Virus record (IMG/VR): IMGVR_UViG_3300023174_000045
Coordinates: 62,001 to 126,000 of that record
DNA: 64,000 nt
Direction: 5' to 3' (one strand)
This document shows, in pieces, positions 15,992-53,630 of the stretch; the stretch's first letter is position 1, and each line of letters opens with the position of its first letter. The notes beneath the pieces are model-generated. The model made no database searches. It worked only from the letters and a program-made list of their open reading frames with translations, and was not told the origin of the DNA. The position numbers were made by a program, and so were the translations under genes.

Positions 15992-16534
15992 ATGCGTGAA
16001 CATATCGACCTAGTAGAAGCCAGCACAAGACCGGCCAAGTTAGAAACTACCCCTTTGCCTTATGGTCCCAAGGATCTAGCACCTGTTATGAGTGCTGAAA
16101 CCATTGATTATCACTACGAACACTTGGCCAAAGGTTATGCCCGGCGTTACAATGCTGGAGAAGGCAATGCAGATTTCAATCGTGCTGGCAGTTTTTTACA
16201 CAACAAATTTTTCCCACAACTGAGGCCGGTCAAAGGTGCCAACAGGCCGCGTGGTGCTGTGCTGGCCTTGATTGAAGAAAAGTTCAAGACTTACGAAGAT
16301 TTCAAAGCGGCAGTGAAAGAAACTGCCATGAAGATACAGGGCTCGGGTTGGGTTTATTTGAGCACTGGTGGCGACATCAAGACCATTGCCAACCATGCTG
16401 TGCGCACAGATATATGCGTGTTGATTGACTGGTGGGAACATGCCTGGGCATTGGACTACCAAAGTGACAAAGAACGTTACCTAGACAATATTTGGAAAAT
16501 TATTGACTGGGACGTTTGCAACGAAAGATTATGA
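15992..16534 (+). CDS. Fe/Mn superoxide dismutase
   Basis: LPY...LAP.MS.ETI.YH, LH, QGSGW, DWWEHAW.LDY. Confidence 0.9.
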
Positions 16535-16854
16535 TGAATTTACAACCAGCGGCCATTAGTAAACTGCAAGAACTTGTTGCTGAAGAAGGCAATCCCAACT
16601 TGATGTTGCGTGTGTTTGTGCAGGGCGGCGGATGTTCGGGATTTCAATATGGCTTTACATTTGACGAAGCACAAAACGAAGATGACTTTGACTTTGTTTA
16701 CGACTCAGTGAAAGTTGTAGTGGATGCCATGAGCATGCAATACTTACAAGACTCTGCAATTGATTACCGAGAAGATGCCATGGGCGCCAGCTTTGTGATC
16801 AACAATCCACAAGCAGTCAGCACCTGTGGATGTGGTTCAAGTTTTTCAGTCTAA
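16531..16854 (+). CDS. erpA: iron-sulfur cluster insertion protein (ErpA/IscA, HesB family)
   Basis: [20 protein letters not shown] ... TCGCGSSF. Confidence 0.92.
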
Positions 16855-19551
16855 ACAAACACACTGATCAGCCATGGTCATTTCAAAGTTGATCTTGTTG
16901 TAATCCACTGAGTAGAATCCATTGGCTTCCAATGTGACTGCGTGAGCAAATTGTGGCTGTTGCAACAAGTCTTGCGCCATGACTCCTGTCCATGTAATAT
17001 CACTCCAGACGTAATTAAAGTTGTAGATCTTTAATCCGTCATCTCGTGTTTGAATCAATTCAATATGATATTTCAGTCTACGATCTGAATAAGCAGAACC
17101 TGCTGAGCTTCCGCCGGCACTTGATGCGCCACTACCATTGCCAGCAGAACTGCCAGCTGATCCTACACCGCCGCTGTTTTTGTTATGCACAATCATGTTG
17201 TTTGCAACATACGTGTGATTGCCGTCAAGAACAAAATTGTAAAGCTGAGTGTCAGGATCTTCGGCATGTTCAGACATGGTGTTTATTGCAATTCCTATTC
17301 CGTCGGCAGTTTCAATTATGTCGCCAACTGACAATTTACCAATATTCCAATCTTGAAATAGTTCATATTTTGCTCGAGTTGCATCTGGGTTGGCTGATTT
17401 CCACTCACCATCTTTGCAATACACAGGATGATCATTGGTCATAAAAGCACTGCTTCCATTGATGGAAACAAGAGTTCTATTGCCCAGTACAGGTCTAATA
17501 TACGCAACAACTGTGTTTGAAACGCTGTCTTTGCCTAGTACTGTTTCTCCAATGCTGACATTTTCAATTGCTTTGCATGATCCATCGGCCATGGTTATTT
17601 GTGTGCCGGCTACAAAACAGCTAATACGCACACTGTCATATACCTTGGGCGGTGGTGGTGGCGCTGCTCTACGGTCCGACGGTCTTGATAATCTTCCAAA
17701 ATCATCAGTTTGTCCGGTGAAGTTTAATGCTGCACCACCAATCAACATTTGCCATGAATTATTGTAATATACATAGGTAGCTGTGGTTTGTTTCCAGGTA
17801 CCATTTACATAGACAAACGCATTCTTGACATCGTGCCAGGCACTGTCAACTGCATCATCTCTAATTTGAGTACCATACGCATCAAAAACTATTACAGCCG
17901 CACCATGCCGTGCTTGCAATTGACCTGCTGATGCTCCGGTGCCTGCCGATCCCACCAAAGAATAATATTGAGAATTTGCTCCAGCAGAAGCAATGCCAGT
18001 GGAATCAATTACCATGCCACCAATGGTAGCAGGTTCATTTCTGTAGCTAATGCCTACCGAGCCAGCTTGTGCATAACTGTCGCCCACACTGCTGTAACCA
18101 TTATTGCCGGCACCACCAGGTCCACCAGGTCCACCAGCACCACCTCCGCCACCGTCTTTGTAGAAGTCACCTTGATTTTGACCAACTTGGCCACTGCTAA
18201 TACCTCCCGCGGTTTGTCCACGCGGCCCGGGGGCATTTGATTCTGATCGACCAGTGGTGCTGTTGCCAGCACCACCACCACCTGCTCCGCCCACGGCCAC
18301 GGCCAACAATGTTTCATTTGTGGTTTTGGGATTCAGCACCAGTGTGGTGCAACCTCCAGAACCGCCACCGCCACCAGAACTACCTTGTGGCCCAGCCAGA
18401 CCACCTGTGGCACCTGACCAGCTTTTGCTGATTACCAGAGCAATACCTGCCGCAGGCAGTGTGGTGTCAGTAAAACTGGCTGTAAATGACAAAGTATGAT
18501 ACCCTTGGTTCACATAGACGTCTGTGACATAAGCAGTGGCGTATGAATCAGTGCCAGGAGTGGTGGCCACCACGGTGCCGTCAATGCTGACAGTGGCTGA
18601 GTTGGCAGCGGCCAGTTGTATTTGGTATATTCCATAATAGGGAAAATAGATATTGTTATAGGTACGAGAACACGATGCCGCTTTGATGTCTTGTTCCCAT
18701 ACCCCATGATCCACTATCAAATTACTGTAGGTTTGAAAAGAAGCGGCTGCTGGAGCAACTGGCGTATACAAAGGTGGACTGGCTGTGGTGGTCCTACTGT
18801 CAAATATTTGTCTTACCAGTCCACTACCACCCAATCCTGCGTTACCAGCAGCAGCTATGGTGAGCCCTACCCCAAAAGTTCCATAAGTTGCTCCAGGATT
18901 GGCTGTGGCAGTGATGCGTATGGTATGCTGTCCGGGTGTTATGGTACGTACAAAGTCCACGCCTGTGCTAACTTGATTGTTCCAACTGTCCAGACCAGAT
19001 TCAATGAATACTTCGCCATCAAGATACACTGTGGCCTGATAATAGGCAGCCAATGTAAACACATAGTTGATAGAATACTGAAACCACACTGTATATGATT
19101 GATCAAAGGTCAAAGTGTTGGCCTGACTGGTCACGCTGCCATTAAACGATGTGCCAGTATTCCATACACCAGTGTCATTTAAAAATTTTGACCATTTGGC
19201 AACATAGGTATTGCTGGCTCGAGGCAGTGTGGTACTACCTGGGCTGTTTGGCACAGCAGTGCGAGTGTTAAAAATGGGTGTTAGATAAGCATTTGCTGGT
19301 GTGCTGTTGACCCCACTGCTGCCAGCAGACCCCACTGTGACTTCAATGGTGTCCCCAGGAACTGCGGTAAACTCTGCTCGAACATAGCCCCCACCAGATC
19401 CTGTGCCTCCGCGATTCTGTCCGTCACTGCCGCCAGCGCCGCCGCCAGCGCCCCACAAGTAAGCAGTCACAGTGGGTGCGTAACCAATGGACGGAAAAGT
19501 TAAAAGTTGACGTGTTTGGGTATTGCCCAACGGTCTAGTTAATGTTGTCAT
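16846..19551 (-). CDS. Gly-rich tail fibre/virion protein with C-terminal Hint domain and S74 intramolecular chaperone domain
   Basis: LWGAGGG Gly-rich regions; CFVAGT...T.DHP...LYNF...HTY.AN..IVHN; YSDRRLK...GVMAQD...VDY. Confidence 0.8.
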
Positions 19552-19557
19552 TGCGCT

Positions 19558-21318
19558 TTATATAATTTGATACCAAATATCTCCAGTGACCCCGGGTAAA
19601 TTGGGGGCCGATGTGCTTACATAACGTGTGCCATACCCGTTGGAATTACTGGCGATTGTGATAGTTCGATCTTCACTGAGATCACCACCACCAGTCAGTC
19701 CACCTGATGCTGTAATGGTTCGAGCGTTTGGCGGAACTCCAAGTTCAAATTGAGCACCAGCTATGGTATTTGCATTGGTACCACCACTGGCAATGGGTAT
19801 GGCAGTGGTCAGGCCACTGATGTTGCCACCAATTATAGACACCGAGTTGGCATTTTGTGTGGAGATTGTGCCCAGGTTGGTGATTGAACCTCTTACAAAT
19901 TCTGTGGTAGCAATTTGCGTGGTGTTAGTGCCTGCTGGGGCAGTGGGGGCTGTGGGTGTGCCAGAGAATTCAGGGCTGACTTTGTTGTTTTGTACAAATT
20001 CTGTACTAGCAACTTGTGTGGTATTTGTTGTAACAGATGCAGTGGGCGCTGTGGGTGTGCCAGCAAATGCAGGGCTGTTGGTAACAAATGCTGTGGTAGC
20101 AAGTTGTGTGGTCGCTGTGCCAACACTGGCTGTGGGGGCTGTGGCATTGCCAGAAAACGCCGGACTGTTGGTCACAAATTCTGTGGTGGCAATTTGCAAG
20201 GTAGCTGTGCCAACGCTGGCTGTGGGGGCTGTGGGAACACCGGCAAATTGGGGGCTGTTGGTCACAAATTCTGTGGTGGCAATTTGTGTGTTTGCTGTGC
20301 CAGTGGATGCTGTAGGGGCTCTGGGTATGCCTGAAAACACCGGACTGATCTTGCTGTTTTGCACAAACGCTGTGGTAGCCAGTTGTGCGCTGTTTGTTGA
20401 TGTATCAGCAGTAGGAGCTTCTGGAATACCAGTAAATGTTGGGCTATTTTTTTCTCCTTGCACAAATGCTGTGGTAGCAATTCGTTCAGTGTTTGATCCA
20501 AATGCAGCAGTGGGTGCAGTGGGTGTGCCAGAAAATTGCGGACTGGTGAGCACAAATTCTGTGGTGGCAATTTGTGCAGTGCTTGTTCCTGGTGCGGCAG
20601 TGGGAGCCTGCGGCACACCAGTGAACACTGGACTGACCATGTTGTTTTGCACAAATGCTGTGGTGGCAATTTGCGTGGTGTTTGTTGACGCAGAAGCGGT
20701 GGGGGCAGTAGGAATACCACTTAATATAACACTGCTGGTCACAAATTCTGTGGTGGCAATTTGTGTGGTGTTGGTACCTGGCGAAGCAGTGGGGGCAGTA
20801 GGTGCGCCAGTGAATTCAGGACTGACCTTGTTGTTTTGCACAAATGCAGTGGTGGCCAGCTGTCCAGTGTTGGTTGTTACTGTGGCAGTGGGTGCTGTGG
20901 GGGTGCCGGTAAATGCAGGACTGACTTTGTTGTTTTGCACAAATGCAGTGGTAGCAATTTGTGTGGTGTTTGTTAGGTCAGATGCTGTGGGTGCCGTGGG
21001 AGTGCCAGATAATGCAGGCGAAATGGTCTGTGCATCTACATAAGTTTGGCTGGCCAATGCTGTCCAAGTGTTGGCTGTGCTGTATGCGCTGATGGTGTCA
21101 GTTGAGGAATTGTACCAAAGTTGTCCTAAAATAGGTTGTACTGGTGCAGAACCATTGGCAAAATTCTCCAACAAATATACGTAGTTTTCGTTTTGATATT
21201 CTCCGTAATTGACCACCGCGCGGCCAACCAATGCAAGATCTGTTGCAGTGGTGTTCACTGTGCCGTCGTCGACTACTGCAACAATATTGCCGCGACTGTT
21301 ATTGATGATGTATGACAT
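19558..21318 (-). CDS. tail fibre-like protein with tandem SP.F.G.PTAPTA..GT.T.QIATT.FV repeats
   Basis: 12 repeats of 26-29 aa; N-terminal L.LVGR...YGE..NEN...LLENFA domain. Confidence 0.8.
   Translation of the reverse strand: MSYIINNSRGNIVAVVDDGTVNTTATDLALVGRAVVNYGEYQNENYVYLLENFANGSAPVQPILGQLWYNSSTDTISAYSTANTWTALASQTYVDAQTISPALSGTPTAPTASDLTNTTQIATTAFVQNNKVSPAFTGTPTAPTATVTTNTGQLATTAFVQNNKVSPEFTGAPTAPTASPGTNTTQIATTEFVTSSVILSGIPTAPTASASTNTTQIATTAFVQNNMVSPVFTGVPQAPTAAPGTSTAQIATTEFVLTSPQFSGTPTAPTAAFGSNTERIATTAFVQGEKNSPTFTGIPEAPTADTSTNSAQLATTAFVQNSKISPVFSGIPRAPTASTGTANTQIATTEFVTNSPQFAGVPTAPTASVGTATLQIATTEFVTNSPAFSGNATAPTASVGTATTQLATTAFVTNSPAFAGTPTAPTASVTTNTTQVASTEFVQNNKVSPEFSGTPTAPTAPAGTNTTQIATTEFVRGSITNLGTISTQNANSVSIIGGNISGLTTAIPIASGGTNANTIAGAQFELGVPPNARTITASGGLTGGGDLSEDRTITIASNSNGYGTRYVSTSAPNLPGVTGDIWYQII
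19890..21025 (-). repeat. intragenic tandem repeat array, 12 units of 78-87 bp
   Basis: Recurring ACAAAT(T/G)CTGTGGT(A/G)GCAATTTG on the + strand. Confidence 0.9.
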
Positions 21319-44449: not shown

Positions 44450-46702
44450 ATGCAAAACAATCCCGAAATTGAACACATTGTAGATCAAGCAGTGAAAATT
44501 GCTCGAGACAAACATCACGAATATGTCATAACTGAACACTTGTTGTTGAGTCTGATCAGGCATGCACCGTTCCGTAAAACCTTGGACAATTTTGGTGTGG
44601 AAGTTGATCAAATGGATCAAGAGGTTGATGTGTATCTTGACAGTTTGAAAAACTTGGTCAAGCCCGGTGAAGAAGTGCAACCACGCAAAACACAAACCTT
44701 GGAACGCCTGTTCAATCGTGCCAATGTGCAGGTCATGTTCACAGGACGCAGAACACTGACCACCTTGGATTTGTACTTGAGCATCATGGCCGAAACCAAC
44801 AGCCATGCACACTACTTCTTGCTGAAATATGGCGTGAAGAAAACTGAGTTTTCAGAATTCTACGGCAAAAATTATCATGCCGGTGAAACCAAAATGAATC
44901 CAGTGCAGGCCAACGAAATACTCACTGAGTACTGCACCAACTTGACAGCCTTGGCACAAGCAGACAAACTGGAACCCTTGATCGGGCGTCAAACAGAACT
45001 GCACGAAATGATCACTGTGATGGCTCGACGCTTCAAGGCCAATGTGCTCATGGTAGGCGATCCTGGCGTAGGCAAGACCTGCATTGTGGACGGCTTGGCA
45101 CAGGAAATTGTGGCTGGACGTGTGCCCAAGTTCATACAAAATCATGAAGTATGGGGACTAGAAGTTGGAAGTTTGCTGGCAGGATCAAAGTACCGCGGGG
45201 AGTTTGAAGAAAAATTCAAGGCTGTGATTGCTGCCTTGGAAACCAAAAAAAACTGTATCCTGTTCATTGACGAAGCACACACCATGAAAGGTGCCGGTGC
45301 CGGAAGCCAAAGTTCATTAGACTTTGCCAACATGCTAAAGCCTGCAATCACCAAAGGCAACTTGAAAGTGATTGCGTCAACAACATGGGAAGAGTATTAC
45401 GAATCATTCGAAAAGGATCGTGCGTTGATGCGCAGGTTCTATCGTATTTCAATTGATGAGCCAGATACAGAAACCACAGAAAAGATTCTCATTGGCCTAA
45501 GCCCAAGACTGGAAAAGTTCCATGATGTGCTAATTGACACAGAAGCAATGATGGCTGCTGTGGAACTGGCCAATCGCTACATACACGATCGTAAAAATCC
45601 TGACAAAGCCATTGACTTGTTGGATGCAAGTTGCGCACGTGAACGTGTGAAAGATCAAGGTACCATCACAGTCACCAAAGAAATGATTCAAGCACAGGTG
45701 TCACGTGTGGCAGGTGTGCCTGTGGATCGCTTGCAAAATGAACGATCGGCAAAGATTGTGGATTTGGAAAGCAATATCAAACAGAAGTTATACGGACAGG
45801 ATAGTGCTGTGGATGCGGTGTTAGAACGTGTGTACATCAACTTTGCCGGCATTGGCAATGCCCGACGTCCTATCTCAAGTTTCTTGTTCTTAGGCCCAAC
45901 AGGTACAGGTAAAACTGAACTGGCCAAACTGTTGAGTGACAACTTGGAAATGAAACTGTTGCGATATGACATGAGTGAGTATCAGGAAAAGCACACAGTA
46001 TCAAGCCTGATTGGTGCGCCTCCTGGTTATGTGGGCTTTGAAGATGGCAACATAGGCGGTGGTAAACTGATCAGTGACATCAGCAAGAATCCCTATGCTA
46101 TCATCTTGTTTGACGAGATTGAAAAAGCACACAGTGATGTCACCAACATCCTGTTGCAAATGCTGGACGAAGGACACATTACGTCAGCCAATGGCAAACG
46201 AGTAGACGTCAAGAACTGCATCATTATCATGACGTCCAACTTGGGGGCTCAAGCCAATGATGCCAACAACATTGGCTTTGGTAGCCTGGAAAAGACCGGT
46301 GAAGAAGATCGTGCCATGAAAGAGTTCTTCCGTCCAGAACTGCGCAATCGTATTGATCGTATCTGCAAGTTCAACAAACTAGACACATTGGCCATCAAGA
46401 AAATTGTGGTGAAGTTTGTGGATGAACTCAAAGCCAGCATGACTGACAAGAACATTCGTCTAGTATTGACTGAGCCTGTGATTGACCACTTGGCTGACAA
46501 AGGCTACGACAGCAAAATGGGCGCACGTCCTTTATCACGCAAGATCGACGAGTTGATCCGTGTTCCACTCAGCAAAAAGATCTTGTTTGATCGACTAGAA
46601 AACTGCGTGATCACAGCAGTGATGGCAACGGATGTTGTGGAATTTGAAATTGAACTAGACAAAGTGAGCACGGTAAATGCCGACGGAATCATTGTTGTAT
46701 AA
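44450..46702 (+). CDS. clpA: ATP-dependent Clp protease ATP-binding subunit (ClpA-like)
   Basis: Clp N domain; GDPGVGKT, LFIDEAH; GPTGTGKTE, DMSEYQEKH, GAPPGYVG, FRPE..NR, GARPL. Confidence 0.92.
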   Translation: MQNNPEIEHIVDQAVKIARDKHHEYVITEHLLLSLIRHAPFRKTLDNFGVEVDQMDQEVDVYLDSLKNLVKPGEEVQPRKTQTLERLFNRANVQVMFTGRRTLTTLDLYLSIMAETNSHAHYFLLKYGVKKTEFSEFYGKNYHAGETKMNPVQANEILTEYCTNLTALAQADKLEPLIGRQTELHEMITVMARRFKANVLMVGDPGVGKTCIVDGLAQEIVAGRVPKFIQNHEVWGLEVGSLLAGSKYRGEFEEKFKAVIAALETKKNCILFIDEAHTMKGAGAGSQSSLDFANMLKPAITKGNLKVIASTTWEEYYESFEKDRALMRRFYRISIDEPDTETTEKILIGLSPRLEKFHDVLIDTEAMMAAVELANRYIHDRKNPDKAIDLLDASCARERVKDQGTITVTKEMIQAQVSRVAGVPVDRLQNERSAKIVDLESNIKQKLYGQDSAVDAVLERVYINFAGIGNARRPISSFLFLGPTGTGKTELAKLLSDNLEMKLLRYDMSEYQEKHTVSSLIGAPPGYVGFEDGNIGGGKLISDISKNPYAIILFDEIEKAHSDVTNILLQMLDEGHITSANGKRVDVKNCIIIMTSNLGAQANDANNIGFGSLEKTGEEDRAMKEFFRPELRNRIDRICKFNKLDTLAIKKIVVKFVDELKASMTDKNIRLVLTEPVIDHLADKGYDSKMGARPLSRKIDELIRVPLSKKILFDRLENCVITAVMATDVVEFEIELDKVSTVNADGIIVV

Positions 46703-50405: not shown

Positions 50406-53400
50406 ATGAATATTCATGAGTTGGACTCTTACAATCTTGGCGACGCAGTAAAGTTTCACCGCCGTCTCAATCCCAGAATCTGGGGGCGAGACGAGCATTT
50501 ACTGCCAGAAGTGCGCAACAAACTGCTGGCCATTGCCGCAGACTTTCAAGAATTCTTGGGTGTTGATAATCTCAACGTTGAAGATATCACCATATCAGGC
50601 TCCAACGCAGCCTACTCCTACACAAAAAACTCAGACATTGATCTACACCTTGTTGTAGCAATGCCCGACAATCCTGTGTATCAGGAATTGTTTAATGCTA
50701 AAAAATATCAATACAACGACGAGCACAACATAAAAATTGGCGGTGCTGATGTGGAATTGTATGTGCAACCTGCGGATCAAGCACACCACAGTCAAGGCAT
50801 TTACTCAATCAAAGATTCGGAATGGCGTCAGATACCACAACGCAAACGTGCGCAGATAGATGATTCTTGTGTGCGTGACAAAACAGCTGACTTGGATGCT
50901 AGAATACACGCCGCAATCAAAAGTCGAAATTTAGAATCCATTAGCACACTGTGGGACAAGATCAAAGCCATGCGCAAAAGCGGACTTGAACAGCACGGTG
51001 AATTTGGTTGCGAAAATATCTCTTTCAAACTGTTGCGCAACAAGGGCTGTATTGGTGCGCTAAAAGATGCAATGATGTCCGAAAAAGATCGTGAACTCAG
51101 TTTGCGTGAAGCACCTGCAACGCCATTTCGTTATGGCTATGGTTCTGAAGTTGACGAAGCCAGTTTGGCAGACATGCGAGCTGCCTTTGCCGCAGATGCC
51201 AAACCACAAAAACAAGAAGTATTTCACAGTCATGATGAATACGAAAAAGTTCGAAAACAACGCGAAGCTGAACGCGAAGAAAAAATCAAACAAATAGCAA
51301 GAAAACCAATGAAGCCGTGGTCGGGAGGCTTGGAAGAAGGCCATCAAGGTCAACCTTACAGTAGTGAAGATGGTGTTGCTGCCAGTACCAAAATGTTCTG
51401 TGAAGACAATGATGACACCCTGGTACACGACTTTATTCAACACACTGCCATGGAACTGGGCATTGATCCCATGCCCGAAATTGTGTTGCACACTGATCCT
51501 GAATGGAGCACCAACAATCACAGTTTTGGCCGCTATGACCCCGAAAGCCACACACTCAACGTCAGCATGCCCAATCGTCACATCCTGGATGTGTTGCGTA
51601 CTGTGGCACATGAACTGGTACACTGCTCACAAAATCAACAGCATGGCAACTTGCCTCCAAATGCAGGCGAAACTGGTAGTCGCTGGGAAAATGATGCCAA
51701 TGCCCGAGCTGGCATAATCATGCGTGACTGGGCCAACACACATCCTGAACACTTTGAATTGCCCCCACTGGACGAAAGTGCGTCAGGATACATTCCTAAA
51801 AATAAAAAAGAAGCAGCCATGCCACAGTATGCCATGGCCTTGAGCGTGGATATCAAGCCAGGACAGACTGGCAAAGAAGCCAACAAGCTGGCATTGCAAA
51901 CAGGCCGCAATGGCGAGCCAGGCTTGTTGATGAAAACTGTGAACTTGCGTGAGTATAAGATGCCACAGCCCAGTCAAGGTCCTGGACGATATAGAGACTT
52001 GAATGAACCACTGGGTCCAGAGACTCCGCCCGAAATGCCAGATGGCACAATCAAAGTAGATGTATCGGACATGTACGACTGGTACAAACTGGGTCAAAAG
52101 ATATCAGACTTAGGCAGTATCAAACCTGGTGAACTAGGGTCAGGTCCTCCAAGTACAGTGTTTGCATTTGGCTCAGAAGATTTAGAAAACATGTACAGTC
52201 ATGAACTCACAAAACTGGGTTTAAAAACACACGACTTGGATGAGCCTGGCGAAGAAGACATTGACGAGAGTGCAAGCGATTACCAAATACACAACACTGA
52301 GAAACTGGATCGTGTGCTGGCCAAGTGTTGTGCTATGATTGAGCGAGGGCAACAAACGGATCCTGAGCGTTACGGTATGGTTGCTGCCTGTGTGATTGAT
52401 CCTGACAATAAACAGGTGTACGGCATCAACTTACCCGGCACTGATGGCACACGCAGACATGCTGAACGTGTGGCCATCAACAAGTACCGCAAGCAGCACG
52501 GTGACATTCCTAAAGGCAGCATTGTGGTCACGACACTGAGTCCCTGCAATAGCCCCATGGATGAACGTGCAGGCGAGAGTTGCAAAGACTTACTAAACAG
52601 TGCGGGCATACACAAAGTGTATTGTGGTTACATTGACCCCACACAGCACGATGATGAGGATGCTGACTTTGTTACAGGTGTCACACAAAATGACGACTTG
52701 TGGGACAGTTGCAAAGCATTTGCCGACACATTCTTACATGAAGATGACTTAGAAGAAGGAATAAAGTCTGCATTGGCCACTGCGGCTTTGGCAGGAACAA
52801 TGGCCATGGGGGCTCAAGCAAAAGCACCAACTATGGTTCAACAAATCGTCGAGCCTGGTGATACAATTTACAGCATAGCAAGACAAACTGGTGCAGATCC
52901 CAAAGAGATATACAAACTCAACAAGATGGATCGTAATACCAAGCTAGAGATAGGACAAAAGGTTCTGGTACCCGATTATGCTAGGCCTATTAGTAAAATG
53001 CCTGCCTCTGTAACACCCACAGTCAAACAAGAACCTGTAAAAGTGGCACCTCCTGCACCAACATTAAAAGATAAAATCTCATCAATGCTACCTAAATTTC
53101 CAGATGATGACGAAGGTGTTGTATTATTGAGCGACAATCCTGACGCAGAAGCCGCGCTACAAACTGCTGCCAAAGCCGCAGGACTTAAAGGTTCTGAACT
53201 GGCACAGTTCATGGCACAGACCCGACACGAAAGTGCAAACTTTGCACACATGAAAGAAATTGGCACTAAGAAAAAATTTGATCATTATGAAAAAAATCGT
53301 ACTCTAGCAAGACGATTAGGCAATACAGTCAAAGGTGATGGAGAAAGATTTAAAGGCCGTGGGTTCATTCAGTTGACCGGACGTGACAACTATACCAGAG

Positions 53401-53630
53401 CCAGCCAACAAATCTTTGGCGATGACCGACTGGTAAGAAATCCTGACTTGGCCAGCAAGTTGGATGTGGCAGCAAAAGTTGCACTGTGGTATTGGAAAAA
53501 TCAAGTTAGGCCCAAAGTCAATGATTTTAACAATACCACACAAGTTGTCAAAGCAATCAATGCTGACGAACCAATGAATGTTGTAAAACAACGTCACAAC
53601 AAATTCAAAGAATATTTGGCGGTGTTATGA
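50406..53630 (+). CDS. five-enzyme mosaic protein: nucleotidyltransferase, zincin, deaminase, LysM, GH19
   Basis: GSNA...SDIDLH; AHELVH..E; HAE...TLSPC...C; VEPGDTIYSIA...L.IGQKVLVP; FMAQT.HES...GRGFIQLTGRDNY. Confidence 0.85.
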   Translation: MNIHELDSYNLGDAVKFHRRLNPRIWGRDEHLLPEVRNKLLAIAADFQEFLGVDNLNVEDITISGSNAAYSYTKNSDIDLHLVVAMPDNPVYQELFNAKKYQYNDEHNIKIGGADVELYVQPADQAHHSQGIYSIKDSEWRQIPQRKRAQIDDSCVRDKTADLDARIHAAIKSRNLESISTLWDKIKAMRKSGLEQHGEFGCENISFKLLRNKGCIGALKDAMMSEKDRELSLREAPATPFRYGYGSEVDEASLADMRAAFAADAKPQKQEVFHSHDEYEKVRKQREAEREEKIKQIARKPMKPWSGGLEEGHQGQPYSSEDGVAASTKMFCEDNDDTLVHDFIQHTAMELGIDPMPEIVLHTDPEWSTNNHSFGRYDPESHTLNVSMPNRHILDVLRTVAHELVHCSQNQQHGNLPPNAGETGSRWENDANARAGIIMRDWANTHPEHFELPPLDESASGYIPKNKKEAAMPQYAMALSVDIKPGQTGKEANKLALQTGRNGEPGLLMKTVNLREYKMPQPSQGPGRYRDLNEPLGPETPPEMPDGTIKVDVSDMYDWYKLGQKISDLGSIKPGELGSGPPSTVFAFGSEDLENMYSHELTKLGLKTHDLDEPGEEDIDESASDYQIHNTEKLDRVLAKCCAMIERGQQTDPERYGMVAACVIDPDNKQVYGINLPGTDGTRRHAERVAINKYRKQHGDIPKGSIVVTTLSPCNSPMDERAGESCKDLLNSAGIHKVYCGYIDPTQHDDEDADFVTGVTQNDDLWDSCKAFADTFLHEDDLEEGIKSALATAALAGTMAMGAQAKAPTMVQQIVEPGDTIYSIARQTGADPKEIYKLNKMDRNTKLEIGQKVLVPDYARPISKMPASVTPTVKQEPVKVAPPAPTLKDKISSMLPKFPDDDEGVVLLSDNPDAEAALQTAAKAAGLKGSELAQFMAQTRHESANFAHMKEIGTKKKFDHYEKNRTLARRLGNTVKGDGERFKGRGFIQLTGRDNYTRASQQIFGDDRLVRNPDLASKLDVAAKVALWYWKNQVRPKVNDFNNTTQVVKAINADEPMNVVKQRHNKFKEYLAVL

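What the first reader, a model, noticed from the sequence alone, without database searches (positions are those of the whole stretch)
16846..17619. Tandem autoproteolytic modules (Hint + S74 chaperone) at the tip of a fibre protein
Seen: a 146-aa Hint domain (Cys at 17619 to His-Asn at 17187-17182) followed by Lys rather than Cys/Ser/Thr, then a Gly/Ser linker, then the S74 motif YSDRRLK. Known: canonical splicing needs a +1 nucleophile; Hint domains lacking it cleave, or ligate the N-terminal fragment to an external nucleophile (Hedgehog, BIL domains); S74 domains assist trimer folding and release themselves. Inference: two release devices in series, or Hint-mediated covalent attachment of the fibre C-terminus to another molecule.
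Basis: partly seen in the sequence, partly recalled or inferred. Interest (0 to 1): 0.62.

Follow-up and report, generated by a model that had tools for sequence, protein, structure and literature searches.

The report
Intein-like domain plus S74 tail
A lake-water giant phage protein ends in two self-cutting modules, an intein-like (BIL-type) Hint domain and a short S74 chaperone/protease tail; the Hint belongs to a phage family that always ends His-Asn-Lys and occurs in 0 to 5 tandem copies at this spot in related phages.

Summary
The gene is window 16846-19551 (-), 901 aa. It encodes a 146-aa Hint domain (Cys645 to His789-Asn790) followed by Lys791, then a 30-aa Gly/Ser linker, then an S74-type tail with Ser822 and Lys827.

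By sequence profile and by predicted fold, the Hint is closest to bacterial intein-like (BIL, type A) domains, not to true inteins. The tail is a short S74 domain, shown through homologues that pass Pfam's threshold.

Family context:
- Among 93 orthologues at the same syntenic locus, the body carries 0-5 tandem Hints.
- These are followed by one of several terminal modules: S74, a CFI-like domain, a Hedgehog-like Hint with a hydrophobic tail, or nothing.
- In 148 distinct Hint copies, Cys1 and the block B His are invariant, His-Asn is kept in 142, and the next residue is always Lys (139) or Arg (3).
- The Hint is under purifying selection (dN/dS 0.2-0.27).
- The same Hint type is inserted 0-4 times in an unrelated large viral protein.

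Most likely these are two independent self-processing devices in series, with the Hint a modular, dispensable BIL cassette. Covalent attachment through the thioester remains possible and has a precedent in Tetrahymena BIL2. This is a new variant of known kinds, and no chemistry has been tested.

The parts
16846..19551 (-). Whole gene, 901 aa (P0001)
   Evidence: ORF list and translation. More than 100 orthologues at 58-93% identity over the body.
17872..19551 (-). Body, residues 1-560: Gly_rich_2 domain with two internally similar PA14-like modules
   Evidence: Pfam on the 92%-identical P0002: Gly_rich_2 at 8.6e-8, PA14 at 4.2e-5. Internal repeat between body1 and body2. dN/dS 0.12-0.15.
17620..17871 (-). 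Pre-Hint domain and Pro-rich junction, residues 561-644, ending in Ser644 (the -1 residue)
   Evidence: Conserved in all orthologues. It is also present in remote 500-640-aa relatives that end shortly after it.
17182..17619 (-). BIL-type (type A) Hint domain, Cys645 to His789-Asn790, 146 aa, no endonuclease insert
   Evidence: Cys1 in 148/148 copies, His-Asn in 142/148. dN/dS 0.27 and 0.205.
17428..17439 (-). Block B motif Thr705-Asn-Asp-His708 of the Hint
   Evidence: His708 is invariant and Asp707 is 95% conserved across 148 copies.
17179..17181 (-). Lys791, the +1 residue
   Evidence: +1 is Lys in 139 and Arg in 3 of the 142 Hint copies that keep His-Asn. Hint-less orthologues in a second protein family show the Lys belongs to the inserted unit.
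17089..17178 (-). Gly/Ser/Ala-rich linker, residues 792-821
   Evidence: Conserved in sequence among single-Hint/S74 orthologues (consensus). dN/dS 0.14-0.28.
16849..17088 (-). Short S74/ICA-type C-terminal domain, Ser822 to Asp901, with the putative Ser822/Lys827 dyad
Evidence: Ser, Asp, Arg and Lys of the motif are invariant in 20 tails. PF13884 is hit by 20/20 tails, best 3.5e-8. phrog_6121 'virion structural protein' at 3.2e-14.
19558..21318 (-). Upstream neighbour: repeat-rich tail-fibre protein, 586 aa
   Evidence: phrog_2631 'tail fiber' at 2.5e-68 and many other tail-fibre PHROGs. Conserved synteny.
16516..16854 (+). Convergent neighbour: IscA-like Fe-S biosynthesis protein. Its 3' end overlaps the gene's end by 9 bases.
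   Evidence: Pfam Fe-S_biosyn at 8.4e-17. Same position in all related contigs.

Best explanation
The gene encodes a virion-associated glycine-rich/PA14-like protein of a freshwater jumbo phage. Its last 257 residues consist of two autonomous, single-turnover self-processing modules.

Module 1 is a 146-aa type-A bacterial-intein-like (BIL) Hint domain. It is inferred to do two things. Cys645 attacks the Ser644-Cys645 peptide bond to give a thioester. Asn790 cyclises to break the Asn790-Lys791 bond. With no Cys/Ser/Thr at +1, the usual outcome for such domains is excision by cleavage at both ends, with at most minor ligation.

Module 2 is a short S74/ICA domain. It is inferred to help the chains associate and then to cut itself off at Tyr821|Ser822, using the Ser822/Lys827 dyad.

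The net result is a mature protein that ends at or near Ser644, with the Hint, the linker and the S74 tail discarded.

The Hint is not a purpose-built partner of the S74 tail. It belongs to a phage-borne BIL family whose repeat unit runs from Cys to His-Asn-Lys. That unit is inserted, duplicated and lost in inter-domain linkers of large structural proteins. It stays catalytically intact because an unprocessed copy would burden the host protein.

Shown: the anatomy, the homology, the fold, the conservation, the selection and the modularity. Inferred: every chemical step, trimerisation, and presence in the virion.
For: - Coordinates and motifs.
- BIL affinity. Profile against the PDB: 2lwy at 7.5e-21 and BIL2 at 2e-17, while full-length mini-inteins reach only ~1e-7. 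Foldseek on the pLDDT-91 model: BIL2 TM 0.76-0.80, 2lwy TM 0.71-0.79.
- Catalytic residues in 148 distinct copies: Cys1 100%, block B His 100%, His-Asn 96%.
- Purifying selection: Hint dN/dS 0.27 and 0.205, against 0.12 and 0.147 for the body.
- Modularity at one syntenic locus: 0-5 Hints and four kinds of ending (synteny).
- A Hint-less orthologue, P0100, has a terminal domain 93-97% identical to copies that follow a Hint.
- The same Hint type occurs 0-4 times at one linker site of another protein family. Hint-less orthologues there lack the Lys.
- S74: invariant Ser/Lys with the same spacing as the endoNF S911/K916 and MyRF S587/K592 dyads (PMC8326128).
- Type A BIL behaviour: Cys1 plus His-Asn, no +1 nucleophile, cleavage dominant, located in hypervariable regions of non-conserved proteins (PMC4031507, PMC7664689, PMC7765530).
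Against: - No processing has been observed. No RNA or protein data exist, and no RNA run holds the stretch.
- The invariant Lys/Arg at +1 is not explained by simple cleavage.
- In this family every S74 tail (34 of 34 cluster representatives) is preceded by at least one Hint. In the 2- and 3-Hint forms the last Hint abuts the S74 serine directly (His-Asn-Lys-Ser-Asp). This hints at coupling.
- Terminal Hints with nothing downstream are kept. Four representatives end His-Asn-Lys-stop. Six have lost His-Asn but keep Cys1 and the block B His. This is easier to understand if the thioester is used for something.
- If the Hint cut early, the S74 tail could not chaperone the body. Known S74 domains sit directly on a trimeric stalk, whereas here a flexible linker and a Hint intervene.
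- The S74 tail is only 80 aa, and the model shows no long C-terminal helix.
Confidence: 0.5

Rival explanations
1. Thioester-driven conjugation. The Hint activates the carboxyl of Ser644 as a thioester. An amine or hydroxyl other than water resolves it, so the body becomes covalently attached to something. That could be the epsilon-amine of Lys791 (an isopeptide 'splice'), a Lys of another virion protein or subunit, or a lipid or glycan. This parallels Tetrahymena BIL2 or Hedgehog.
For: - BIL2 is among the closest solved relatives: second by sequence profile after 2lwy, and best by fold. It is reported to form an isopeptide bond between a Lys epsilon-amine and the C-terminus, and to conjugate its N-extein to other proteins (PMC8616854, section 2.4).
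- +1 is Lys in 139 of 142 copies.
- Terminal Hints without any C-extein are maintained. The terminal Hint-without-His-Asn plus hydrophobic-tail modules resemble the Hedgehog Hint+SRR layout.
- Cys runs lie directly before Cys1 in 83/148 copies.
Against: - Arg replaces Lys at +1 in several distant copies. This points to conservation of charge rather than of an amine nucleophile.
- In tandem arrays the Lys is also the -1 residue of the next Hint.
- Hint-less orthologues exist, so no essential attachment depends on the Hint.
- There is no acceptor candidate and no experimental data.
Confidence: 0.17
2. True self-removal by splicing. As in type A BILs, Asn790 cyclises first and the freed alpha-amine of Lys791 attacks the thioester. 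The body is then rejoined to the linker and the S74 tail. All Hints, however many, vanish without trace. They are essentially selfish passengers, and the S74 tail then acts on the rejoined chain.
For: - Splicing without a +1 nucleophile is documented for type A BILs (PMC4031507; 2lwy, title cited in PMC7664689).
- The variable copy number, 0-5 and 0-4 at a fixed site in two protein families, looks like a neutral passenger.
- This would let the S74 tail remain attached to the body until trimerisation.
- The strict conservation of catalytic residues matches the logic that keeps inteins active.
Against: - Cleavage products dominate in the BILs studied (PMC4031507, PMC7664689).
- The insertion sites are flexible linkers, not conserved folded cores, so ligation is not needed for host-protein folding.
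- Versions that end in His-Asn-Lys-stop have nothing worth ligating.
Confidence: 0.15
3. Non-catalytic structural use. The Hint domains stay in the mature protein as compact beads that set the length or stickiness of the distal end. The conserved Cys/His/Asn serve metal binding or folding.
For: - Copy-number variation resembles that of Ig-like spacer domains in phage fibres.
- BIL2 binds Zn through His residues (PMC8616854).
- Proteins ending exactly at His-Asn-Lys look like finished products.
Against: - Conservation of exactly the four intein catalytic positions is 96-100% across copies that are only ~30-50% identical overall.
- His-Asn is lost only in copies that have no downstream sequence. 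This is what is expected if His-Asn exists to cut a downstream bond.
Confidence: 0.1

Closest known systems
Type A bacterial intein-like (BIL) domains, e.g. Clostridium thermocellum BIL (PDB 2lwy)
   Same: Same size (~140-150 aa). Cys1, block B His, C-terminal His-Asn and no Cys/Ser/Thr at +1. No endonuclease. Sits in a hypervariable region of a non-conserved protein. Best sequence-profile match (7.5e-21); fold TM 0.71-0.79.
   Different: Found in phage structural proteins. The +1 residue is invariantly Lys/Arg. Copies occur in head-to-tail arrays of up to five, joined by that single Lys. Often preceded by a Cys run. Followed here by an S74 tail.
BIL2 of the Tetrahymena thermophila BUBL1 polyubiquitin-like locus (PDB 6tmm, 6y75)
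   Same: Best fold match (TM 0.76-0.80) and second-best sequence match (2e-17). Occurs in repeated arrays. A Lys amine is the reported acceptor of the activated C-terminus (PMC8616854).
   Different: In BUBL the BILs alternate with ubiquitin-like domains, and the acceptor Lys lies in the next Ubl. Here nothing but one Lys, or a Gly/Ser/Cys linker, separates copies. No conjugation has been shown.
Class 1 mini-inteins, e.g. the helicase intein of Vibrio phage K389
   Same: About 30% identity over the whole Hint. Same blocks A, B, F and G.
   Different: The intein sits in a conserved enzyme site and is followed by Cys. The window's Hint sits in a linker and is followed by Lys.
S74 / intramolecular chaperone auto-cleavage (ICA) domains of endosialidase endoNF, T5 L-shaped fibre, GA-1 gp12 and MyRF
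   Same: Placed at the C-terminus. Same Ser and Lys spacing as the Ser-Lys dyad (S911/K916 in endoNF). PF13884 homology through orthologues (PMC8326128).
   Different: Only 80 aa, with no predicted long C-terminal helix. Not adjacent to a triple beta-helix stalk: a 30-aa Gly/Ser linker and a Hint lie upstream.
Brucella phage Tb gp23 'virion structural protein' (short S74 tail)
   Same: 49% identical over 69 aa, including the S-D-R-R-L-K motif. Same short form ending ~65 aa after the Ser. Passes PF13884.
   Different: No Hint. A 328-aa protein with an unrelated body.
PT-HINT modules of polymorphic toxins
   Same: A Hint placed just before an exchangeable C-terminal module. PF07591 hits on paralogous copies. 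A phage example, with a WHH-like end, is in Ruminococcus phage NatCom_3870.
   Different: The downstream module here is a chaperone/protease tail, not a toxin.
Hedgehog Hog domain (Hint + sterol-recognition region)
   Same: Some orthologues end in a Hint that keeps Cys1 and the block B His, lacks His-Asn and is followed by ~100 aa with a hydrophobic end.
   Different: The window's own Hint keeps His-Asn and has no such tail.

Membership tests
HINT superfamily | Hint fold (horseshoe of beta-strands with pseudo-twofold symmetry) | tested here: met
   AF2 model of residues 641-795: pLDDT 91, pTM 0.85. Foldseek gives 49 PDB matches at E<=0.001; those listed are inteins, BIL or Vint domains, top TM 0.80.
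Type A BIL domain | N-terminal Cys/Ser nucleophile | tested here: met
   Cys645. Cys in 148/148 family copies.
Type A BIL domain | Block B Thr-x-x-His | tested here: met
   Thr705-Asn-Asp-His708. The His is invariant.
Type A BIL domain | C-terminal His-Asn | tested here: met
   His789-Asn790. Present in 142/148 copies.
Type A BIL domain | No Cys/Ser/Thr at +1 | tested here: met
   Lys791. Lys in 139 and Arg in 3 of 142 copies.
Type A BIL domain | Located in variable regions of non-conserved proteins; no homing endonuclease | tested here: met
   Inter-domain linker, 0-5 copies among orthologues, 146 aa with no insert. Criterion taken from PMC7765530.
Type A BIL domain | Autocleavage at the N and C junctions | not testable with these tools
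   Needs expression and MS.
Canonical class 1 intein | Cys/Ser/Thr at +1 for trans-esterification | tested here: not met
   +1 is Lys. The related helicase intein of Vibrio phage K389 has Cys.
Canonical class 1 intein | Insertion in a conserved site of an essential protein | tested here: not met
   Sits in a Pro- and Gly-rich linker. A Hint-less orthologue exists with a different junction.
Peptidase S74 / ICA domain | Match to PF13884 above the gathering score | tested here: inconclusive
   The window's tail scores 18.9 bits, below the cut-off of 22. The orthologue P0037 scores 33.2 and Brucella phage Tb gp23 scores 35.1, both above it. All 20 tails hit at E<=0.1.
Peptidase S74 / ICA domain | Ser-Lys catalytic dyad, Ser-x4-Lys | tested here: met
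   Ser822 and Lys827 are invariant in 20 tails. The spacing matches S911/K916 and S587/K592 (PMC8326128).
Peptidase S74 / ICA domain | Trimerisation with a C-terminal helical coiled coil | tested here: inconclusive
   The monomer model shows beta-strands and one short helix only. The three-copy fold gave no verdict. The fold match to MyRF ICA is only Z 3.2.
Peptidase S74 / ICA domain | Directly follows a trimeric stalk whose folding it assists | tested here: not met
   A Gly/Ser linker and a Hint lie upstream.
Peptidase S74 / ICA domain | Self-cleavage at the Ser | not testable with these tools
   Needs expression and MS.
Hedgehog-type Hog domain | Hint without His-Asn followed by an adduct-recognition region | tested here: not met
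   The window's copy keeps His-Asn and is followed by a linker and S74. Only other orthologues carry the Hog-like ending.

The most novel reading that the evidence does not exclude
The His-Asn-Lys Hint domains could be a phage-encoded, enzyme-free conjugation device. Each copy would turn the carboxyl end of the segment before it into a thioester, and an amine or hydroxyl would capture it. Candidates are the adjacent Lys, a Lys on another virion or host-surface protein, or a lipid in the Hedgehog-like terminal variants. The distal end of the structural protein would then be covalently cross-linked or anchored, and the S74 tail would bring three such reactive ends together.
Probability: 0.12. 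Interest if true: 0.85.

Novelty: new variant of a known kind. Interest (0 to 1): 0.55.

Why it matters
BIL domains are known from bacterial surface and toxin proteins and from ciliate polyubiquitin-like loci. Their biological purpose is still debated.

This work shows a large, coherent BIL family in structural proteins of freshwater phages. It has a strict His-Asn-Lys signature and arrays of up to five copies. Natural 'experiments' come ready-made: orthologues with 0-5 copies, terminal copies that have lost His-Asn, and Hedgehog-like endings.

That makes a long-standing question directly testable with a few constructs: do BILs merely cut, do they splice, or do they conjugate?

The Hint-S74 series has practical uses. 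It is a compact natural cassette that should release a protein's C-terminus in two chemically different ways. It also warns annotators that the mature ends of such phage proteins differ from the gene's end.

Tried and rejected
- A first AF2 model of residues 625-901, built from 22 close orthologues, was poor (mean pLDDT 48.5). Only the S74 part reached 70-86, and Hint matches were weak at Z<=6.5. It was replaced by a model of the Hint alone from a diverse 40-row alignment.
- A three-copy fold of the S74 tail gave 'no answer' (score 0.02). It is not evidence either way.
- A profile of the S74 tails found no solved structure by sequence at E<=1.
- blastn of the gene and tblastn of the body against 50,697 cultured-phage records found nothing. 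Only the Hint (inteins, BIL-like) and the S74 tail (Brucella phages) had matches.
- The Atlas look-up gave only the Gly_rich_2 cluster.
- NCBIfam and Pfam gave no name for the alternative terminal domains, apart from a weak CFI_box_CTERM hit on a remote relative.
- Literature searches found no description of Hint or BIL domains in phage fibre or structural proteins, or next to S74. The primary BIL2 paper is not held.
- Rejected: a canonical intein, because +1 is Lys and the site is a linker.
- Rejected: a decaying relic, because dN/dS is 0.2-0.27 and the catalytic residues are invariant.
- Rejected: an assembly chimera, because the same architecture appears on independent contigs from other samples.
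- Considered and set aside: a link between the Cys runs and the neighbouring IscA gene. The window's own protein has no Cys run before Cys645.
- No other genetic code was needed. Read laying and the large representative search were not used.
Full report
**Observation.** The finding lies in one ORF, window 16846-19551 on the minus strand, 901 aa (P0001). A script located every landmark:
- Cys645 at 17619-17617
- His789-Asn790 at 17187-17182
- Lys791 at 17181-17179
- a Gly/Ser/Ala-rich stretch, residues 791-821
- the motif Y-S-D-R-R-L-K, with Ser822 at 17088-17086 and Lys827 at 17073-17071
- 80 residues from Ser822 to the end

**Source.** The window is part of a 225-kb IMG/VR virus record judged 65% complete, which implies a jumbo phage of roughly 350 kb. 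Near-identical DNA occurs in lake, freshwater and river metagenomes from 14 studies. One orthologue lies on a 351-kb contig.

**Neighbourhood.** The gene sits directly downstream of a repeat-rich tail-fibre gene (19558-21318, minus; phrog_2631 at 2.5e-68). It converges on an IscA-like gene and a Fe/Mn superoxide dismutase gene. This order is kept on every related contig examined. The body is a Gly_rich_2 domain with two PA14-like modules. No cultured phage has a detectable homologue of it. 'Fibre' is therefore an inference from position, not a demonstrated property.

**The Hint domain.**
- Pfam Hom_end_hint matches the N-terminal block at 7.9e-10.
- I built a profile from 40 diverse family copies (alignment A3) and searched it against all PDB sequences. 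The C. thermocellum bacterial intein-like domain 2lwy came first (7.5e-21, full length), followed by the BIL2 domain of the Tetrahymena BUBL1 locus (2e-17). Full-length mini-inteins reached only about 1e-7.
- An AF2 model of residues 641-795 from that alignment has pLDDT 91. Its best Foldseek matches are BIL2 (TM 0.76-0.80) and 2lwy (TM 0.71-0.79), ahead of all inteins.
- The domain has Cys1, the block B motif Thr-Asn-Asp-His, the C-terminal His-Asn, no endonuclease insert and no Cys/Ser/Thr at +1. That set is the published definition of a type A BIL. Such domains mostly cleave at both ends but can ligate their flanks through the freed alpha-amine (PMC4031507; PMC7664689). They typically lie in hypervariable regions of non-conserved proteins (PMC7765530).
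- The nearest cultured-phage relatives of the Hint are true helicase inteins of Vibrio phages, about 30% identical. These are followed by Cys.

**The S74 tail.**
- On its own the window's tail falls below Pfam's threshold (18.9 bits against 22).
- All 20 aligned homologous tails hit PF13884. The orthologue P0037 scores 33.2 bits. The C-terminus of Brucella phage Tb gp23, a 'virion structural protein', is 49% identical over 69 aa and scores 35.1 bits.
- Ser, Asp, Arg and Lys of the motif are invariant.
- The Ser-to-Lys spacing equals that of the catalytic dyads S911/K916 of endoNF and S587/K592 of MyRF. In those proteins cleavage occurs only in the trimer (PMC8326128).
- It is a short form, with no predicted long C-terminal helix. 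It is not attached to a trimeric stalk. A three-copy fold gave no verdict. Homology and the dyad are established; trimerisation and cleavage are inferred.

**Family context.** Two word-index searches were run, one seeded in the C-terminal third and one in the body. Together they returned 133 cluster representatives. Domain mapping shows 93 proteins with the same body and pre-Hint domain but different ends:

| Ending | Representatives |
|---|---|
| 1 Hint + linker + S74 (the window's type) | 23 |
| 2 Hints + S74 | 10 |
| 3 Hints + S74 | 1 |
| 1 Hint + a ~135-aa 'CFI-like' domain | 26 |
| CFI-like domain with no Hint (P0100) | 1 |
| 2 Hints and nothing else (4 end His-Asn-Lys-stop; 6 end in a last Hint that has lost His-Asn) | about 10 |
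| 0-4 canonical Hints + a terminal Hint lacking His-Asn + ~100 aa with a hydrophobic end | 16 |

- The His-Asn-Lys-stop form is a complete gene: it ends 18 nt before the IscA gene on a 15.8-kb contig.
- P0100's terminal domain is 93-97% identical to copies that follow a Hint, while the bodies are only 70-74% identical. The C-terminal cassettes are therefore shuffled by recombination.
- More remote relatives of 500-640 aa end shortly after the pre-Hint domain. The whole cassette region is thus an add-on of this phage clade.

**Conservation within the Hints.** Across 148 distinct copies:
- Cys1 is present in 148.
- The block B His is present in all.
- His-Asn is present in 142.
- The six exceptions are terminal copies with nothing downstream.
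- The residue after Asn is Lys in 139 and Arg in 3.
- The residue before Cys1 is Cys in 83, often as a run of two or three.

Where copies abut, the junction is His-Asn-Lys|Cys. Where the last copy abuts the S74 tail, it is His-Asn-Lys|Ser-Asp.

A tree of the copies groups them by position in the array. It nests the two kinds of terminal copies inside the clade of copies that abut S74. That tree is the quick search, not the finished careful one. It implies old duplications, vertical descent and secondary loss of the S74 tail.

Against two orthologues with DNA in hand, dN/dS of the Hint is 0.27 and 0.205. For the body it is 0.12 and 0.147, and for the S74 tail 0.12 and 0.18. The Hint is constrained, somewhat less than its host.

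**The same Hint elsewhere.** A scan of viral contigs found the same His-Asn-Lys Hint inside a different, very large (about 2,000-aa or larger) viral protein. It occurs 0, 1, 2, 3 or 4 times in tandem, always after a Pro-rich linker and immediately before a conserved domain that begins Asp-Pro-Ile/Leu-Ala-Gln. Hint-less orthologues pass from the linker straight into Asp-Pro, with no Lys. The inserted unit therefore runs from Cys to Lys inclusive.

**Interpretation.** The anatomy supports 'two release devices in series'. The Hint is best seen as a modular BIL cassette rather than as a device evolved for this fibre. It is dispensable and copy-number variable, and it combines with unrelated downstream modules and with an unrelated host protein. 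I put 0.5 on plain double cleavage plus S74 self-cleavage, which would leave a mature protein ending near Ser644.

Several facts do not fit comfortably:
- the invariant basic +1 residue
- the fact that no S74 tail in this family lacks a preceding Hint (34 of 34)
- the maintenance of terminal Hints that keep only the N-terminal chemistry
- the Hedgehog-like terminal modules
- the Cys runs

These keep two alternatives alive: a thioester-capture (conjugation) reading and a splicing reading.

BIL2, the best fold match and second by sequence profile, is reported to form a Lys isopeptide bond and to conjugate its N-extein to other proteins (PMC8616854). This gives the conjugation idea a real precedent. 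On the other hand, the occasional Arg at +1 argues that charge rather than the amine is conserved. None of the chemistry can be decided in silico. The constructs that would decide it are listed under next steps.

**Novelty and score.** Each module is a known kind. I found no description of BIL or Hint domains in phage structural proteins, in tandem arrays joined by a single Lys, or next to an S74 tail. I rate it a new variant of a known kind, with interest 0.55.

Noticed in passing
L002-L004 and L028-L039 (viral contigs): A second family of very large viral proteins (about 2,000 aa or more) carries the same His-Asn-Lys Hint. It occurs 0-4 times in tandem after a Pro-rich linker and just before a conserved domain starting Asp-Pro-Ile/Leu-Ala-Gln. 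Hint-less orthologues lack the Lys.
   Followed up: partly
Orthologues P0008-P0016, P0089-P0093, P0097, P0099, P0105, P0107 (C-terminal ~230 aa); L042 2083-3525: A Hedgehog-like terminal module: a Hint with Cys1 and block B His but Val-Asn-Gly-Tyr instead of His-Asn, then ~100 aa ending in a hydrophobic stretch plus basic residues. Achromobacter phage 2-1 gp27, next to the baseplate hub, ends in a similar Hint preceded by a Cys-rich run.
   Followed up: partly
Orthologues such as P0061, P0063, P0083-P0088, P0100 (last ~135 aa): An alternative terminal domain begins Cys-Cys-Phe-Ile-Met-Leu-Glu-Ala. It is highly conserved (93-97%) across bodies that are only 70-74% identical. It has no Pfam or NCBIfam name.
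   Followed up: partly
Linkers before Cys1 in 83 of 148 Hint copies (not in the window's own copy): Runs of two or three Cys lie immediately before the catalytic Cys, with further Cys in the Gly-rich linkers. Their function is unknown.
   Followed up: no
window 19558-21318 (-) and 19763-21043 (+): The tail-fibre gene region is open on both strands: 586 aa (-) with strong tail-fibre PHROG hits, and 426 aa (+). Gene callers on related contigs picked different strands.
   Followed up: partly
window 15992-16854 (+): IscA-like Fe-S assembly and Fe/Mn superoxide dismutase genes lie next to the structural genes. In relatives they are conserved together with eIF-1a-like, WYL_2 and radical SAM genes.
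   Followed up: partly
window 50406-53630 (+): A 1074-aa protein with an endolysin/transglycosylase-like C-terminal part (phrog_181 at 1.3e-30). It may be a virion-associated lysin.
   Followed up: no
window 44450-46702 (+): A 750-aa two-AAA+ 'ATP-dependent protease' (phrog_4871, 4e-237), an unusual cargo for a phage.
   Followed up: no
L041 2251-3804 (Ruminococcus phage NatCom_3870): A 518-aa phage protein has a Hint (His-Asn followed by Ala) and then a C-terminal module with a Trp-His-His motif. This is the layout of a polymorphic toxin.
   Followed up: no
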